A stretch of 64,000 nucleotides of DNA from the IMG/VR virus record IMGVR_UViG_3300035703_000009, positions 1-64,000 of that record; one strand, 5' to 3'. This document shows, in pieces, positions 1-26,296 of this stretch (its first letter is position 1; the number at the start of each line of letters is the position of its first letter). The translations under genes were made by a program, and so were the position numbers. The notes beneath the pieces were generated by a model that saw nothing but the letters and a program-made list of their open reading frames with translations, was not told the origin of the DNA and did no database searches.

Positions 1-13
1 GTTAGTGGTAATT

Positions 14-277
14 TTAATCTTTGTATCTACTCCATACCGCAGAACCATCAATACCATCTTTCCACATTCCTTCGTCATTTTCCTTAACAGTTTTGAAGAA
101 TTCTTTAACTAAATCCAACACTTCTTTTTTATCCATTTTTACACCTTCGTAATATACATCATCTCTTTGATTTCTGAAGAATTCTTCAAAACGATTAAAA
201 CTACCACTAACATCAGATATACGCAATTCTTTTTCTGCGTTTTCCGAAGTTTTGTCTTTATTATTTAAGTTTTCCAT
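14..277 (-). CDS. hypothetical cassette protein (87 aa)
   Basis: ORF starts inside the loop of attC-like site 1; its leader ends ...LRISDVSGS. Confidence 0.7.
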   Translation of the reverse strand: MENLNNKDKTSENAEKELRISDVSGSFNRFEEFFRNQRDDVYYEGVKMDKKEVLDLVKEFFKTVKENDEGMWKDGIDGSAVWSRYKD

Positions 278-328
278 ATCTATTTAATTTTGTGTTAGAA
301 CTGCGTATATCTACAACAGTTATAGGCA
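202..328. mobile_element. attC-like recombination site 1 (integron-type cassette boundary)
   Basis: TACCACTAAC (202-211) and GTTATAGGCA (319-328) cores flank a 16-bp inverted repeat, AGATATACGCAATTCT (215-230) / AGAACTGCGTATATCT (297-312), 15/16 match. 202-211 is the exact reverse complement of 1-10. Confidence 0.7.
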
Positions 329-520
329 ATGTCTGATGAAGTTCACAGAAAGTATCTCGTATGATGGAAATTTTCGTTTTGCTTTACCTATTGCTCCTTT
401 ATCCGTTTTGGCGAACACTACAATGTCATAATGGGCATAATCCCACCTCATTTTAACCAAGAAGGCACTGCCTATAACAGCAGGTTGCTTCAATGGCTTA
501 GTTTCGTTCTTTTTTGACAT
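320..520 (-). CDS. hypothetical cassette protein (66 aa)
   Basis: ORF starts inside the loop of attC-like site 2; its leader ends ...KQPAVIGS and its stop lies in the TAAC core. Confidence 0.65.
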   Translation of the reverse strand: MSKKNETKPLKQPAVIGSAFLVKMRWDYAHYDIVVFAKTDKGAIGKAKRKFPSYEILSVNFIRHCL

Positions 521-607
521 ATCTTCGTTTATTTAAAGGTTGTAATTCTAATTAAGTTTATCGGTTAAAGTCGCCACTAAAGCAACCTGCAAAACGTTAT
601 GTGTAAT
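469..607. mobile_element. attC-like recombination site 2
   Basis: TGCCTATAAC (469-478) and GTTATGTGTAAT (596-607) flank a perfect 11-bp inverted repeat, GCAGGTTGCTT (480-490) / AAGCAACCTGC (580-590). 469-478 is the exact reverse complement of 319-328. Confidence 0.7.
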
Positions 608-620
608 ACTATTATACTAA
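608..620 (-). promoter_or_regulatory. -10-like box (TAGTATAATAG) pointing into the cassette array
   Basis: ATTATA at 611-616 on +, between the upstream terminator and the first attC-like core. Confidence 0.55.
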
Positions 621-628
621 GTTAGATT

Positions 629-660
629 AAAAAATAAAAAAGGGATCCTAAGATCCCTTT
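629..660 (-). terminator. intrinsic terminator
   Basis: AAAGGGATC-CTAA-GATCCCTTT hairpin (639-660) followed by a T-run on the minus strand, downstream of 684..1442. Confidence 0.8.
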
Positions 661-24385: not shown

Positions 24386-26296
24386 ATGGCAGGAATAAAC
24401 AACTTACGAGAAATACGCGACAAGCGCGGGGATGACTTTTTAAATGGCATGATGAATAATTACGTCATCATCAATGAGAAGGTCGATGGCACATTCTTTG
24501 GAGTAAAAAAGACTAAAGGAGACCTATTTAAGTACTTCAAGAAATCGGGAGAGATCAGCTATGTCGATCGAGTGCTGATGAAGTACTACAACCACGTGAT
24601 CGCATATTTTGAGTCGATTCCTCTCGAGAAGAGGCAACGTATTCCAACAAATTTCTTTTTTGGATTCGAGTACTTGACCAAACGTGACGCAGCGGCAAGC
24701 CGATACTCAAGGATGCCAAAGAATGGCTTGGTTCTTTCCTACATCCATAAGTTAGATGATGCTGGAAACGTCATTGCTACAGTTCAAACAAAAGAACATC
24801 TTGATAGATGGGCGGACTATCTAGGAGTAGAGAGACCGCCGATAATCTTTGAAGGCAAGCTCGACGACGAACAAAGAGCCGAGATACTTGAGTTCGTCTA
24901 TGCACCAAACGATAAGTTATACGAAAAATTCAAGACCAAGTCCTTTACCAAGTACATCATCTCGGTTCTAAACAAGGATTATGAGTCGGCCTTCTTAAAG
25001 AACTCTAAGGAAGCTGGAATCGAAGGAATCATTTTTAGGTTCTATGATCAGAACTCTGAAAACCCAGAAGCAAACGTCTTCCTAGCAAAGTTGATAGATC
25101 CGCTATTTCAAGCAAAGGTAAAAGAAGGCGAGCCTGCTCGTAAGAATTCCTCGCAAGACTATATCTGGCTGATCGTCATCGACCTAATGAACCACTTTGA
25201 GATGTATGACCTTTCCGCATTAAAGGAAATGGCAAGCACACCAGGATCCTTTGAAGAAAAGTACGTGCAAATCATCAATTCCATATTTAAAGACTTTATT
25301 AAACAATACGCTGGCAAGTATGCAGGTCTGCATCTAGAGGTTCCAGAATACTTAAATCGACCTGAGTTCAACCTTGATTTTAGCCTAATCCAGGATCCAG
25401 AAGTAAAGAAGTTGGTCGAATCCAGCGAGACCTATGCTGAGATCTATAAGATCTTGCTCAACTTTTTCAGAAAGGCTCGTAAGAAATCGACTTCGGGTTT
25501 CTTCACCAACGAGTTACTGACTCAACTCAACCTCATCGTCGCAAAGATTCGTAACGTGATCATGGGAGACGAGGTGTATGAGGGACTCTTCCCAAGCTTT
25601 AGCGAGTTTGTGGGATCAGCAAACGATGAGTACATGCTGAGCGAGAAAGAAGTCGCTGAGCGCAATAGCAAAAAAGTCGAGGCTAATGAGGTCAATGTTC
25701 TAATTGGAAGCTTTCAGCCAGTGACGATGGGTCACATCAAAGCGGCAAAGAAGCTAAAGGAAAAGAACGGGTTACCGTGCGTCTTTGTTGCGATAAAGCC
25801 TCAATCGCCCACCGCAAAGTCACCTTTTTCTCCACGCTTAACTAAAGCACTATTAGACAAGGTGCAACAGGAGTTTAACGACCTGATAGTCGACGTCAAG
25901 ATAGTCGACTCTGGCCAGATTGAGGATGTAGTAGGCACATTGACTCCAAACTATGAACCTGCTCTTTGGGGAACAACTGAGCGTCGTCTTAAGGACTTTG
26001 CTCTGCAATTAGATTACATCAAAAAAAGAAACATTCCAATAAGGCTCTCTTCGAACCTAAAGTTGACTGAATTACCAGTCTACGTTAGATCAGAAGAAGT
26101 TATTGCTGCCATAAAGAGCTCAGACTTTGCTGAATTCAAAAAGCTAGTGCCAATATCTGTCGCATCAGAGTTCTTTAACTTACAAAAAGAGCTCGGATCG
26201 AAGATTGATGAAGCGACTAATTCAATGCAGAAGATATTTGAATCCGCAGAGATCTCGATTGAGATCGAGGATCCAAAGCTAAAGGAATCGGACTAA
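24386..26296 (+). CDS. RNA ligase (Rnl2-like) fused to a HIGH-class nucleotidyltransferase domain
   Basis: Ligase motifs I EKVDGT, III FGFEY, IV EGIIFR, V LAKL; C-terminal GSFQPVTMGH (T/HxGH)...SPF...FKKLVP. Confidence 0.75.
   Translation: MAGINNLREIRDKRGDDFLNGMMNNYVIINEKVDGTFFGVKKTKGDLFKYFKKSGEISYVDRVLMKYYNHVIAYFESIPLEKRQRIPTNFFFGFEYLTKRDAAASRYSRMPKNGLVLSYIHKLDDAGNVIATVQTKEHLDRWADYLGVERPPIIFEGKLDDEQRAEILEFVYAPNDKLYEKFKTKSFTKYIISVLNKDYESAFLKNSKEAGIEGIIFRFYDQNSENPEANVFLAKLIDPLFQAKVKEGEPARKNSSQDYIWLIVIDLMNHFEMYDLSALKEMASTPGSFEEKYVQIINSIFKDFIKQYAGKYAGLHLEVPEYLNRPEFNLDFSLIQDPEVKKLVESSETYAEIYKILLNFFRKARKKSTSGFFTNELLTQLNLIVAKIRNVIMGDEVYEGLFPSFSEFVGSANDEYMLSEKEVAERNSKKVEANEVNVLIGSFQPVTMGHIKAAKKLKEKNGLPCVFVAIKPQSPTAKSPFSPRLTKALLDKVQQEFNDLIVDVKIVDSGQIEDVVGTLTPNYEPALWGTTERRLKDFALQLDYIKKRNIPIRLSSNLKLTELPVYVRSEEVIAAIKSSDFAEFKKLVPISVASEFFNLQKELGSKIDEATNSMQKIFESAEISIEIEDPKLKESD

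What the first reader, a model, noticed from the sequence alone, without database searches (positions are those of the whole stretch)
202..520. attC-like sites supply the start codon and an in-frame leader peptide of the cassette genes
Seen: both ORFs start inside the loop of the adjacent element and read through its arm and core in the same frame. The core GTT is read as Val in both (D-V-S-G-S; A-V-I-G-S). The stop of ORF 320..520 is the TAA of the next core. Inference: the recombination site doubles as the translation-initiation module. If crossover occurs at the minus-strand GTT, shuffling would create in-frame leader-body fusions. If it occurs at the plus-strand GTT, the cassettes are self-contained with inverted genes.
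Basis: partly seen in the sequence, partly recalled or inferred. Interest (0 to 1): 0.65.

Follow-up and report, generated by a model that had tools for sequence, protein, structure and literature searches.

The report
Phage integron-like cassettes with built-in leaders
The two small genes at the start of this lake-phage contig are gene cassettes of a widespread, apparently undescribed, integron-like system of uncultured phages, in which the hairpin site in front of each gene also carries that gene's start codon and first 15-25 codons.

Summary
Minus-strand ORFs 14-277 and 320-520 each start in the loop of a hairpin element and read through its 3' arm and GTT core as Val. ORF 320-520 stops at the TAA of the next core.

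This is a family trait. In gene direction each site reads ATTnnnnnTAAC, 5-nt spacer, stem, loop, stem, 1-2 nt, GTTAnnnnnAGT. I found 529 such sites in 133 IMG/VR loci, against 12 in shuffles. Of the 113-130-nt sites, 101 of 176 hold an ATG in frame with GTT, 28 use frame +1 and 3 use frame +2.

The same leader sits on different gene bodies, and one identical body sits behind different leaders. Metagenome contigs break exactly at the cores.

A 264-268-aa Xer-like tyrosine recombinase lies just downstream of related arrays, behind a conserved attI-like junction. It lacks the IntI-specific insertion. Co-oriented sites number 319 upstream of it and 5 downstream.

Stem mismatches are G.T on the sense strand (384 against 43). 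Shared units run from TAAC to TAAC.

No recombinase lies in this 207-kb contig; the array runs off position 1. Recombination itself is inferred, not shown.

The parts
208..322 (-). Hairpin site W1 (115 nt). Read on the minus strand: TAAC 322-319, spacer 318-313, 5' arm 312-297, loop 296-231 holding the ATG at 277-275, 3' arm 230-215, GAT 214-212, GTTA 211-208.
   Evidence: Inverted repeat I5. Scanner hit with score 13. It is 78% identical to a site in the 462-kb phage LR756500.1, and ISDV-type relatives occur in many IMG/VR loci.
475..599 (-). Hairpin site W2 (125 nt). Read on the minus strand: TAAC 599-596, spacer 595-591, 5' arm 590-573, loop 572-498 holding the ATG at 520-518, 3' arm 497-480, T 479, GTTA 478-475.
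   Evidence: Inverted repeat I4. Scanner hit. Folded as ssDNA, the sense strand gives an R stem, an internal loop and an L stem, with z = -2.1. Copies 76-95% identical in leader peptide sit on other gene bodies in L010, L014, L015 and L018.
14..277 (-). ORF1, 87 aa. The leader MENLNNKDKTSENAEKELRISDV is encoded in W1; the body SGSFNRF... lies between the cores.
   Evidence: The body is 93-95% identical in L005-L008 behind other leaders; the leader alone occurs on other bodies in L010-L013. No Pfam or PHROG match.
320..520 (-). ORF2, 66 aa. The leader MSKKNETKPLKQPAV is encoded in W2. The stop codon TAA (322-320) is the core of W1.
   Evidence: Only the leader has relatives. No Pfam or PHROG match.
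1..211 (-). Body 1, flanked by its own inverted repeat: GTTAGTGGTAGT... at 211-190 and ...ATTACCACTAAC at 22-1. The contig begins exactly at this core.
   Evidence: Inverted repeat I1, 22 nt, 91% complementary. The family rule is that a body's own flanks match 5.78 of 8 positions, against 2.9 for controls. Source-run contigs continue past position 1 in two different ways.
319..478 (-). Body 2, flanked by its own inverted repeat: GTTATAGGCAGTGCCT at 478-463 and AGACATTGCCTATAAC at 334-319.
   Evidence: Inverted repeat I6, 16 nt, 88% complementary.
2..319 (-). Predicted cassette 1 (site W1 plus ORF1 body), if the crossover is at TAA|C on the sense strand, which equals G|TTA on the plus strand.
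   Evidence: This is an inference from three observations: TAAC-to-TAAC shared units, the attI-like junction, and the G.T bias on the sense strand.
320..596 (-). Predicted cassette 2 (site W2 plus ORF2 body). It is the last cassette at the end of the array away from the expected recombinase.
   Evidence: Same inference as for cassette 1. Logan contigs of other lakes end or branch at 319, 312/314, 475 and 208.
596..607 (-). Outermost R'' box, ATTACACATAAC, which marks the upstream (gene-direction) end of the array.
   Evidence: No further sites were found upstream.
639..660 (-). Terminator-like hairpin followed by a T-run, belonging to the preceding 252-aa gene (684-1442). It is not part of the array and marks its border.
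   Evidence: Inverted repeat I13; sequence.

Best explanation
Window 1-607 is the outer end of an array of mobile gene cassettes. The array belongs to a phage-specific, integron-like system.

Each cassette consists of a structured site followed by a small gene body. In gene direction the site reads TAAC, 5-nt spacer, 10-25-bp stem, loop, stem, 1-2 nt, GTTA. The body's two ends (GTTAnnnnnAGT ... ATTnnnnnTAAC) are complementary to each other.

On the folded sense strand of a free cassette, the body ends would form an 'R' stem and the site an 'L' stem, separated by an asymmetric unpaired spacer. That is an attC- or dif-like substrate.

In related phages a Xer-like tyrosine recombinase is encoded directly downstream of the array, behind a conserved junction (TAAC|TAnnnTATATA). 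It most likely exchanges cassettes by cutting at TAA|C on the sense strand, so each cassette runs from one TAAC to the next.

Because the site sits at the 5' end of its gene, its loop has been used for expression signals. In the 113-130-nt class the loop holds an A-rich initiation region, the ATG, and a 15-25-codon leader. The leader is read through the 3' arm and the GTT core (Val) into the body.

Shown:
- the anatomy and the frame bias
- modular reassortment at the cores
- the association between recombinase and array in related phages

Inferred:
- that the recombinase acts on these sites
- which strand is cut, and where
- that the leaders are translated
For: Family and structure. There are 529 sites in 133 loci against 12 in shuffles, in discrete size classes of 48, ~79, ~88, ~115 and ~125 nt. 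Stems covary: 5151 Watson-Crick pairs across 322 unique sites that fall in 207 sequence clusters.

Leaders. Frame 0 occurs in 101, frame +1 in 28 and frame +2 in 3 of 176 long sites. Dozens of leader families end in (A/D/G)V. The context before the ATG is A-rich.

Reassortment.
- One site cluster occurs between many different bodies.
- The ORF2 leader occurs on at least 5 bodies, and the ORF1 body behind 3 leader variants.
- In lake metagenomes the same sites join other bodies, with breaks at 208, 312-319 and 475. In the source run there are two different continuations past position 1.

Body flanks. A body's own flanks are complementary at 5.78 of 8 positions, against 2.96 for the R''/R' pair of one site and 2.88 for random pairs.

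Recombinase.
- It matches PF00589 plus a SAM-like N-terminal domain.
- It lies downstream of 17 of 47 array 3' ends and 0 of 46 array 5' ends.
- In 74 loci chosen by recombinase homology alone, 319 co-oriented sites lie upstream and 5 downstream. In 51 of 55 loci a site ends within 1.5 kb of the gene.
- A conserved attI-like junction precedes it. Phages with identical recombinase regions diverge exactly at TAAC.

Strand and cassette unit. Mismatches on the sense strand are G.T in 384 cases and A.C in 43. Units shared between unrelated contexts run from TAAC to TAAC. Among bodies at least 95% identical, 5 distinct events keep the upstream site and 0 keep only the downstream site.

Phage specificity. 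The 48-nt class has more than 120 hits in IMG/VR but only 3 in 185,579 prokaryote genomes.
Against: - No tyrosine recombinase, Y1 transposase, serine recombinase or reverse transcriptase is found in this 207-kb contig, nor in LR756500.1, which also carries an array. For this window the recombinase link is therefore by analogy.
- The recombinase lacks the IntI-specific insertion that reads attC extrahelical bases.
- Within an array, R'' and R' of one site share only TAAC/GTTA, so an attC-type fold in situ would have a 4-bp R stem.
- The ORF1 body is 100% identical behind leaders that are 70% identical. This needs exchange at GTTA or homologous recombination in the 3' arm, which the TAA|C model does not predict.
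- Four of the five linkage events involve the very common 48-nt site.
- Leader sequences show no clear third-position bias: 51, 39 and 59 variable columns at codon positions 1, 2 and 3. Translation therefore rests on frame maintenance and context.
- My scanner requires TAAC and GTTA, so their invariance is partly by construction. The looser AAC/GTT scan recovered the same array sites plus 3 hits outside the array, and homology breakpoints fall on the same cores.
Confidence: 0.62

Rival explanations
1. Classical integron orientation. The gene-sense strand is the 'top' strand and the crossover is at G|TTA just before the body. A cassette is then a body plus the site downstream of it. Every insertion fuses the incoming body to a leader supplied by the preceding cassette.
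For: The ORF1 body is 100% identical over 211 nt behind leader sites only 70% identical, with identity starting about 10 nt before GTTA. One near-identical leader occurs on many bodies. A nearly universal frame across GTT (101 of 132 leader ORFs) is what in-frame swapping would select. The extra unpaired bases lie on the 3' arm of the antisense strand, which is where I recall attC extrahelical bases lie on the bottom strand (from memory, not tested).
Against: Shared units run from TAAC to TAAC and include the upstream site (5 events against 0). Homology between phages with identical recombinase regions breaks at TAAC|attI, not at GTTA. Mismatches would be A.C on the strand that folds in this model. 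Cassettes would arrive without their own start codon.
Confidence: 0.15
2. There is no dedicated site-specific recombination. The sites are conserved regulatory or RNA-structure modules, like the PeSL promoter/stem-loop cassettes of T4-type phages. Bodies are reshuffled by ordinary homologous recombination between near-identical sites during co-infection. The hairpins would work in the mRNA (processing, stability, start-codon exposure). The neighbouring recombinase would have another job.
For: Sites 48-130 nt long and more than 93% identical recur between unrelated genes, which gives ample homology. The G.T (G.U) bias on the transcribed sense strand is the classical signature of RNA structure. 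Sites are co-oriented with genes, 167 sense against 4 antisense. Some loops hold a Bacteroidota-type promoter. The sense RNA folds into the chain of hairpins with z = -6.4. Arrays exist without any recombinase in LR756500.1. PeSL shuffling is documented (PMC2839356, PMC4122927).
Against: Homologous recombination does not explain why every body carries its own 8-22-nt inverted repeat ending in GTTA/TAAC. It does not explain the near-obligatory, polar position of the recombinase (319 against 5 sites; 51 of 55 loci). It does not explain the sharp break at TAAC next to a conserved attI-like sequence. An RNA stem closing each ORF would put the processing helix inside coding sequence.
Confidence: 0.17
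3. Chance, or a private feature of this phage. Two small AT-rich ORFs happen to lie among local inverted repeats, and there is no shared mechanism.
For: Only two sites lie in the window, and two ORFs sharing a frame has a 1 in 3 chance. Isolated W1 folds only weakly as ssDNA (z about -1.1).
Against: The same architecture occurs in hundreds of sites from more than 200 viral contigs, with 12 hits in shuffles. W1 is 78% identical to a site in a distant 462-kb phage. The frame bias also argues against chance.
Confidence: 0.01

Closest known systems
Integrons (IntI, attI, attC cassette arrays), including sedentary chromosomal integrons with homogeneous attC families such as VCRs
   Same: - There is an array of small, mostly ORFan cassettes; only 7 of 148 have a Pfam hit.
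- The sites are imperfect bipartite hairpins with conserved AAC/GTT-type cores and stems that vary in sequence but covary.
- Each cassette start is complementary to its own distal core.
- A tyrosine recombinase of the Xer/IntI clade lies at one end, behind an attI-like junction, and is transcribed away from the array.
- Site families are shared by many cassettes.
- The stop codon often lies in the TAAC core.
   Different: - The recombinase is 264-268 aa and lacks the IntI-specific insertion. It scores below the cut-offs of the NCBIfam IntI, XerC/D and XerA models.
- Cassette genes point toward the recombinase rather than away from it, so each site lies 5' of its gene.
- Sites carry start codons, leaders and sometimes promoters.
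- The R boxes are 12 nt with a conserved G.T. The spacers are 5 nt against 1-2 nt, instead of extrahelical bases.
- The system is found in phages and essentially not in bacterial genomes.
CALINs (clusters of attC sites lacking an integrase) reported in virulent phages (Qi et al. 2023, PMC9892861)
   Same: These are clusters of attC-type sites in phage genomes with no integrase nearby, as in this window and in LR756500.1. Cargo there includes DNA methyltransferases, which also occur in or near these arrays.
   Different: The published cases are clusters of a few sites each (a minimum of two per CALIN; 3 in phage TJE1), found with IntegronFinder or HattCI in cultured phages and recombined by bacterial IntI1. 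Here the arrays are dense (up to 18 sites in 8 kb) and form a distinct, self-consistent site family. They occur in uncultured lake phages, often with their own Xer-like recombinase, and the sites hold gene starts. Whether IntegronFinder would call these sites was not testable here.
PeSL promoter/stem-loop cassettes of T4-type phages (Arbiol et al. 2010, PMC2839356; Comeau et al. 2014, PMC4122927)
   Same: Conserved intergenic modules combine a stem-loop with expression signals. They flank small accessory genes in hyperplastic regions of large phages and mediate modular shuffling.
   Different: PeSLs are direct repeats thought to act by homologous recombination. They have no dedicated recombinase, no TAAC/GTTA cores, no gene-specific flanking inverted repeats and no encoded leader.
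Xer recombination on folded single-stranded DNA (CTX-phi attP(+) hairpin with XerCD; PMC3442271) and pdif modules of Acinetobacter plasmids (from memory)
   Same: A Xer-family enzyme acts on a hairpin that mimics a two-arm site with an unpaired central region. In pdif modules the gene modules are bounded by inverted Xer sites.
   Different: Those systems use host XerCD and dif-like 28-bp sites. No dif-like duplex site was recognised here, and the enzyme is phage-encoded.

Membership tests
Integron | An IntI-type tyrosine recombinase carrying the additional domain (I2 helix) between patches II and III | tested here: not met
   No PF00589 match occurs in the window's 207-kb genome. In related arrays the recombinase aligns to VchIntIA (2a3v) in two blocks: query 20-179 to IntI4 17-180, and query 193-264 to IntI4 244-313. 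About 50 residues of IntI4 therefore have no counterpart. TIGR02249 scores 161 bits against a cut-off of 265.
Integron | attC sites: imperfect inverted repeats R''-L''...L'-R' with conserved ...AAC and GTT... cores and a variable loop | tested here: met
   The architecture is TAAC, spacer, stem, loop, stem, spacer, GTTA. It occurs in W1 and W2 and in 529 family members against 12 in shuffles. Lengths are 48-130 nt. The official attC covariance model could not be run.
Integron | Extrahelical bases that mark the recombined (bottom) strand | tested here: inconclusive
   No single-base bulges were seen. Instead there is a constant asymmetric spacer (5 nt against 1-2 nt) and conserved G.T wobbles on the sense strand. 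Whether these are equivalent is unknown.
Integron | The first bases of a cassette are complementary to the inverse core of its own attC | tested here: met
   A body's own flanks match at 5.78 of 8 positions beyond GTTA/TAAC, against 2.96 for the same site and 2.88 for random pairs. Complementarity often runs 10-16 nt or more. In the window the repeats are 22 nt and 16 nt.
Integron | The array abuts an attI site next to the integrase gene | tested here: met
   This holds in related loci, not in the window. A conserved TAAC|TA(T/G)nnTATATA sequence lies 40-80 nt before the recombinase ATG. In 51 of 55 recombinase loci a site ends within 1.5 kb upstream. The window's array runs off the contig in the direction where the recombinase would lie.
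Integron | Cassette genes are mostly promoterless, transcribed away from attI from a common promoter, with attC 3' of the gene | tested here: not met
   Genes are co-oriented with the recombinase gene and point toward it. The site lies 5' of the gene in the shared units. Loops hold start codons and sometimes promoters.
Integron | Integrase-dependent cassette excision and insertion | not testable with these tools
   Only population polymorphism at the cores is seen.
CALIN (attC cluster without integrase) | At least two attC sites with no integron integrase nearby | tested here: inconclusive
   There are two sites and no recombinase in the contig. However, the contig starts inside the array, and source-run contigs continue past position 1. 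LR756500.1, apparently a whole genome, has an array and no PF00589 match.
PeSL regulatory cassettes | A conserved direct-repeat motif of a terminator-like stem-loop followed by an early promoter, flanking genes in T4-type phages | tested here: not met
   The sites are not direct repeats of one motif. The stems differ in sequence, the loops are large, and the signals lie inside the loop. A PeSL-like promoter repeat does exist elsewhere in this genome.
IS200/IS605 or REP/RAYT hairpin elements | A Y1 HUH transposase acting on subterminal hairpins | tested here: not met
   There is no PF01797 match in G000 or LR756500.1. The recurrent neighbour of these arrays is a tyrosine recombinase, not an HUH enzyme.

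The most novel reading that the evidence does not exclude
Uncultured freshwater phages, probably of Bacteroidota, carry their own cassette-exchange platform, a 'phage integron'. It is run by a short Xer-like recombinase that lacks the IntI insertion. Its single-strand hairpin sites have been turned around so that they sit 5' of each gene and double as that gene's promoter, start codon and leader module. The platform would trade hundreds of ORFan accessory genes between unrelated phages. The AT-rich array in this 43%-GC phage would be one such import.
Probability: 0.55. Interest if true: 0.9.

Novelty: new variant of a known kind. Interest (0 to 1): 0.85.

Why it matters
If this is right, integron-type cassette capture is not confined to bacteria and archaea. 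Phages would have an independent version, built on a Xer-like enzyme without the domain thought to be needed for hairpin-site recombination. That bears on how IntI evolved from Xer.

It would also give a concrete mechanism for the fast turnover of small accessory genes in large phages, which is where anti-defence genes are usually found. It would define a catalogue of hundreds of mobile ORFan cassettes with exact boundaries.

A recombination site that also encodes the start codon and the N-terminus is an unusual overlap of DNA-structure and protein-coding constraints. One visible result is the V-x-x-S motif that the R' box imposes.

There is a practical point too. These arrays break metagenome assemblies exactly at the cores, which explains contig ends such as position 1 of this record.

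Tried and rejected
- **Rfam scan.** A scan of the array and of the LR756500.1 locus at E up to 1 gave only a chance miRNA hit. No known ribozyme or RNA family matched.
- **Other enzyme families.** Searches of both genomes for a tyrosine recombinase, Y1 HUH transposase, serine recombinase and reverse transcriptase were all negative. HUH-type, serine-type and retro-type mechanisms were dropped.
- **Host integron origin.** The commonest 48-nt site has only 3 exact hits in 185,579 species genomes, all in metagenome-assembled genome (MAG) assemblies. Among 50,697 GenBank phage records it occurs only in two uncultured huge phages.
- **ORF1 and ORF2.** Pfam and PHROG scans found nothing.
- **Codon-position test for leader translation.** The result was not significant.
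- **Array-level token alignment for single-cassette indels.** No informative pairs emerged in the first data set. The recombinase-anchored set gave two informative groups.
- **Relatives of the window's phage.** I looked for an array and recombinase beside the homologue of the 252-aa gene. None of 16 relatives shows that arrangement: 15 have no site and none has the recombinase (L233 gave three scanner hits, not examined). The array is a lineage-specific insertion, and the missing end could not be recovered that way.
- **The other contig end.** It shows no clean site with my scanner.
- **Translational bypassing and RNase III processing-stem readings.** I considered and set these aside. There are no matched take-off and landing codons, and a processing helix would lie inside coding sequence.
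- **Limits of the read data.** All runs laid were Logan contigs, not raw reads. No circle junctions or read-level joints could be sought.
Full report
**1. Setting**

The window is bases 1-64000 of a 207,110-bp linear IMG/VR virus contig, rated 81% complete. Positions 1-620 are AT-rich compared with the rest of the genome, which is about 43% GC. This stretch holds two small minus-strand ORFs, 14-277 (87 aa) and 320-520 (66 aa). They lie downstream of a 252-aa gene (684-1442) that ends in a terminator-like hairpin at 639-660. Neither small ORF matches Pfam or PHROGs.

**2.

Four inverted repeats tile the region with gaps of only 1-6 nt:
- 1-22 with 190-211
- 215-230 with 297-312
- 319-334 with 463-478
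- 480-497 with 573-590

Read in gene direction (minus strand), two kinds of unit alternate.
- A 'site' reads TAAC, spacer, stem, 66- or 75-nt loop, stem, 1-3 nt, GTTA.
- A 'body' reads GTTA-x ... x'-TAAC, and its two ends are complementary.

Both ATGs (277-275 and 520-518) lie in site loops. Both frames read the 3' arm and then GTT as Val (ISDV|SGS and QPAV|IGS). The stop of ORF 320-520 is the TAA of the next core.

These two are the only such sites in the 207-kb genome; locally shuffled genomes give 0-1. The sense strand 620..1 folds as exactly this chain of four hairpins, with z = -6.4.

**3. It is a large family**

Site W1 (205-330) is 78% identical to a stretch of LR756500.1, a 462-kb uncultured phage whose homologue of one large window ORF (24386-26296) is only 28% identical. 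That phage has a cluster of like sites.

Searching IMG/VR with the two ORFs gave a telling pattern.
- The body of ORF1 is 93-95% identical in four contigs, but behind other leaders.
- The ORF1 leader alone sits on other bodies.
- For ORF2, only the leader (residues 1-20) has relatives, on five different bodies.

My scanner then found 529 sites in 133 loci (1.11 Mb), against 12 in shuffles.

The architecture is strict. In gene direction it reads ATTnnnnnTAAC, a 5-nt spacer, a stem of 10-25 bp, a loop, the other arm, 1-2 nt, then GTTAnnnnnAGT. Total lengths fall in discrete classes of 48, ~79, ~88, ~115 and ~125 nt. Stems differ in sequence but stay paired: 5151 Watson-Crick pairs in 322 unique sites.

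The family is nearly absent from 185,579 prokaryote species genomes (3 hits). It is also absent from cultured phages in GenBank. The window sequence occurs in about 20 lake-water metagenomes.

**4. Sites as start modules**

Among the 176 sites of 113-130 nt, I counted those with an ATG inside the site that opens a frame running at least 25 codons past the core.
- 101 are in frame 0, where GTT is read as Val.
- 28 are in frame +1, where TTA is read as Leu. Several of these look like lipoprotein signal peptides.
- 3 are in frame +2.

The 48-nt class has no frame-0 case and the ~88-nt class has 6 of 102.

The 20 nt before these ATGs are A-rich and lack a Shine-Dalgarno sequence. From general knowledge, this is the Bacteroidota style of initiation. 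Genes that follow short sites start 20-60 nt after GTTA, with the same kind of context.

Codon-position variation in the leaders is not significantly biased. Translation of the leaders is therefore inferred from frame maintenance and context, not shown.

The upstream ORF most often stops at the TAA of the core (83 of 390) or 12 nt before it (49).

**5. Modules reassort at the cores**

One site cluster (at least 93% identical) lies between different bodies on both sides. The 48-nt site occurs in 47 contexts, and several leader sites occur in 2-3 contexts each.

Logan contigs from other lakes carry W1 and W2 joined to other bodies. Homology ends at 208, 312-319 and 475. In the probable source run, two different contigs continue beyond window position 1. 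So the array goes on, and it is polymorphic exactly at the core where the IMG/VR contig stops.

**6. A recombinase partner**

The most recurrent large ORF near arrays is a 264-268-aa tyrosine recombinase, found in 16 of the 96 loci with two or more sites. It matches PF00589 at E = 3e-38 and has a SAM-like N-terminal domain. It always lies just downstream of the last site and is co-oriented with the cassette genes.

The placement is strongly polar.
- It lies within 1.5 kb of 17 of 47 array 3' ends and of 0 of 46 array 5' ends.
- In the reverse test, 74 loci were chosen by recombinase homology alone. These hold 319 co-oriented sites upstream and 5 downstream. In 51 of the 55 loci with enough upstream sequence, a site ends within 1.5 kb of the gene.

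The last body ends in ATTnnnnnTAAC, followed by a conserved TA(T/G)nnTATATA... sequence 40-80 nt before the recombinase ATG. Phages whose recombinase regions are at least 95% identical carry quite different cassettes, and their homology breaks exactly at that TAAC. This is the geometry of attI next to intI.

The enzyme belongs to the Xer/IntI clade. Its best PDB matches are XerA (4a8e) and VchIntIA (2a3v). All NCBIfam models score below their cut-offs, and about 50 residues of IntI4, which I take to include the IntI-specific insertion, have no counterpart.

The window's genome and LR756500.1 have no such gene. In the window, however, the array leaves the contig in the direction where the gene would lie. 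Sixteen relatives of the window's phage, found through the 252-aa gene, show no comparable array beside that gene and no recombinase (15 have no site at all; L233 gave three scanner hits, not examined). Together with its low GC, this marks the array as an import.

**7. Which strand, and which unit**

Three lines point the same way.
- Stem mismatches are G.T on the gene-sense strand (384) and rarely A.C (43). There is also a conserved G.T at position 11 of the body-closing stem, in 198 of 275 bodies. The sense strand therefore appears to be the one that folds.
- Units shared between otherwise unrelated contexts run from one TAAC to the next and include the site upstream of the gene. An example is L022 and L099, with site and body 100% identical and both flanks unrelated. 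Among bodies at least 95% identical, 5 distinct events keep the upstream site and lose the downstream one; none does the reverse. Four of the five involve the very common 48-nt site, and looser thresholds give one or two converse cases.
- The attI-like break is at TAAC|.

Together these favour cutting at TAA|C on the sense strand, which equals G|TTA on the window's plus strand. Cassettes are then self-contained: site with start and leader, then body. Relative to a classical integron the genes are 'inverted' and point toward the recombinase. In the window this predicts cassettes at 2-319 and 320-596.

The ORF1 body, however, is 100% identical behind leaders only 70% identical. The leader/body junction therefore also exchanges, whether by a minor reaction or by homologous recombination in the conserved 3' arm.

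**8. Alternatives**

A PeSL-like model has homologous recombination between conserved regulatory modules, with the hairpins working in RNA. It fits the G.U bias, the strict co-orientation with genes (167 against 4) and the promoters seen in some loops. It does not explain the body-specific inverted repeats, the polar recombinase or the attI-like break.

HUH, serine-recombinase and retro-element mechanisms lack their enzymes in both genomes. No Rfam family matches.

**9. What is known**

CALINs and a few integrons have been reported in phages (PMC9892861). PeSL shuffling is known in T4-type phages (PMC2839356, PMC4122927). Full-text searches found no description of this site family, of a Xer-like recombinase coupled to arrays in phages, or of recombination sites that supply start codons.

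Cargo is almost all ORFan: only 7 of 148 cassette proteins have a Pfam hit (YopX, a C5 methylase, HAD_SAK_2 and DUFs).

**10. Verdict**

The element is best filed as a new, phage-borne variant of the integron kind, not as a member of the integron family. Recombinase action, the cut site and leader translation remain inferences.

Noticed in passing
L002:2830-3760 (G000 205,830-206,760): Near the other end of the genome contig, each small plus-strand gene is preceded by a near-identical motif: AAAAAGTTTTTAGTTGTC..., about 10 nt, then TTTTGTTATATTTAC. It looks like a repeated early promoter in the PeSL style. It is a different modular system in the same phage.
   Followed up: no
L002:3797-4111 (G000 contig 3' end): The last gene of the contig is AT-rich (99 aa, no family hit). 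The contig stops 2 nt after ...GTTGTATAAC-GG, that is just after a TAAC core plus the start of a typical spacer. This end may also break inside a cassette array.
   Followed up: partly
window:38000-51000: This is a 13-kb AT-rich block (30-37% GC, against about 43-44% for the rest of the window) of about 14 tightly packed minus-strand genes of 190-490 aa. It may be a second imported region.
   Followed up: no
L015:3891-5258, L120:2883-4288, L138:7655-8453: Some array-associated recombinase genes are interrupted. In L015 and L120 an insert of about 850 nt separates roughly residues 140-172 from residue 237. In L138 there is a frameshift or split. GIY-YIG/NUMOD homing endonucleases recur near arrays (7 loci).
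   Followed up: no
for example L015:2054-2142 and L005:3823-3911 (~88-nt sites): Ten of 90 unique ~88-nt sites contain TTTG-N17-23-TAnnTTTG, the Bacteroidota housekeeping promoter consensus, in or next to the loop. This suggests Bacteroidota hosts, and that some sites are promoter modules rather than leader modules.
   Followed up: partly
for example L100:1124, L099 (minus strand) 1547 and L051:9967: In the frame +1 class the leader is a lipoprotein-type signal peptide (for example ...LAFASLL|LVAGCSS). The GTTA core and the R' box lie inside the signal sequence or lipobox.
   Followed up: no
48-nt sites, for example L010:1822-1869: The short class has an almost invariant 11-nt loop, TCGTTTTAATG, while its 11-bp stem varies with compensatory changes. 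The loop itself seems to be recognised by something.
   Followed up: no
L155, L175, L179, L185, L187, L202, L216: Many IMG/VR contigs begin 50-180 nt upstream of the recombinase gene, at the attI-like junction. These arrays systematically break short-read assemblies, as at window position 1.
   Followed up: partly
L048:7624-8100 and L070:7076-8128: Phage loci next to arrays encode SmpB (the tmRNA partner) in 5 loci and a full DnaJ in 4 loci.
   Followed up: no
L003:2774-2870 (LR756500.1): This is a 97-nt 'body' with a perfect 16-nt inverted repeat (GTTATGAACAATGCTT ... AAGCATTGTTCATAAC) and no ORF. It appears to be an empty or non-coding cassette. In all, 20 body clusters shorter than 120 nt were seen.
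   Followed up: no
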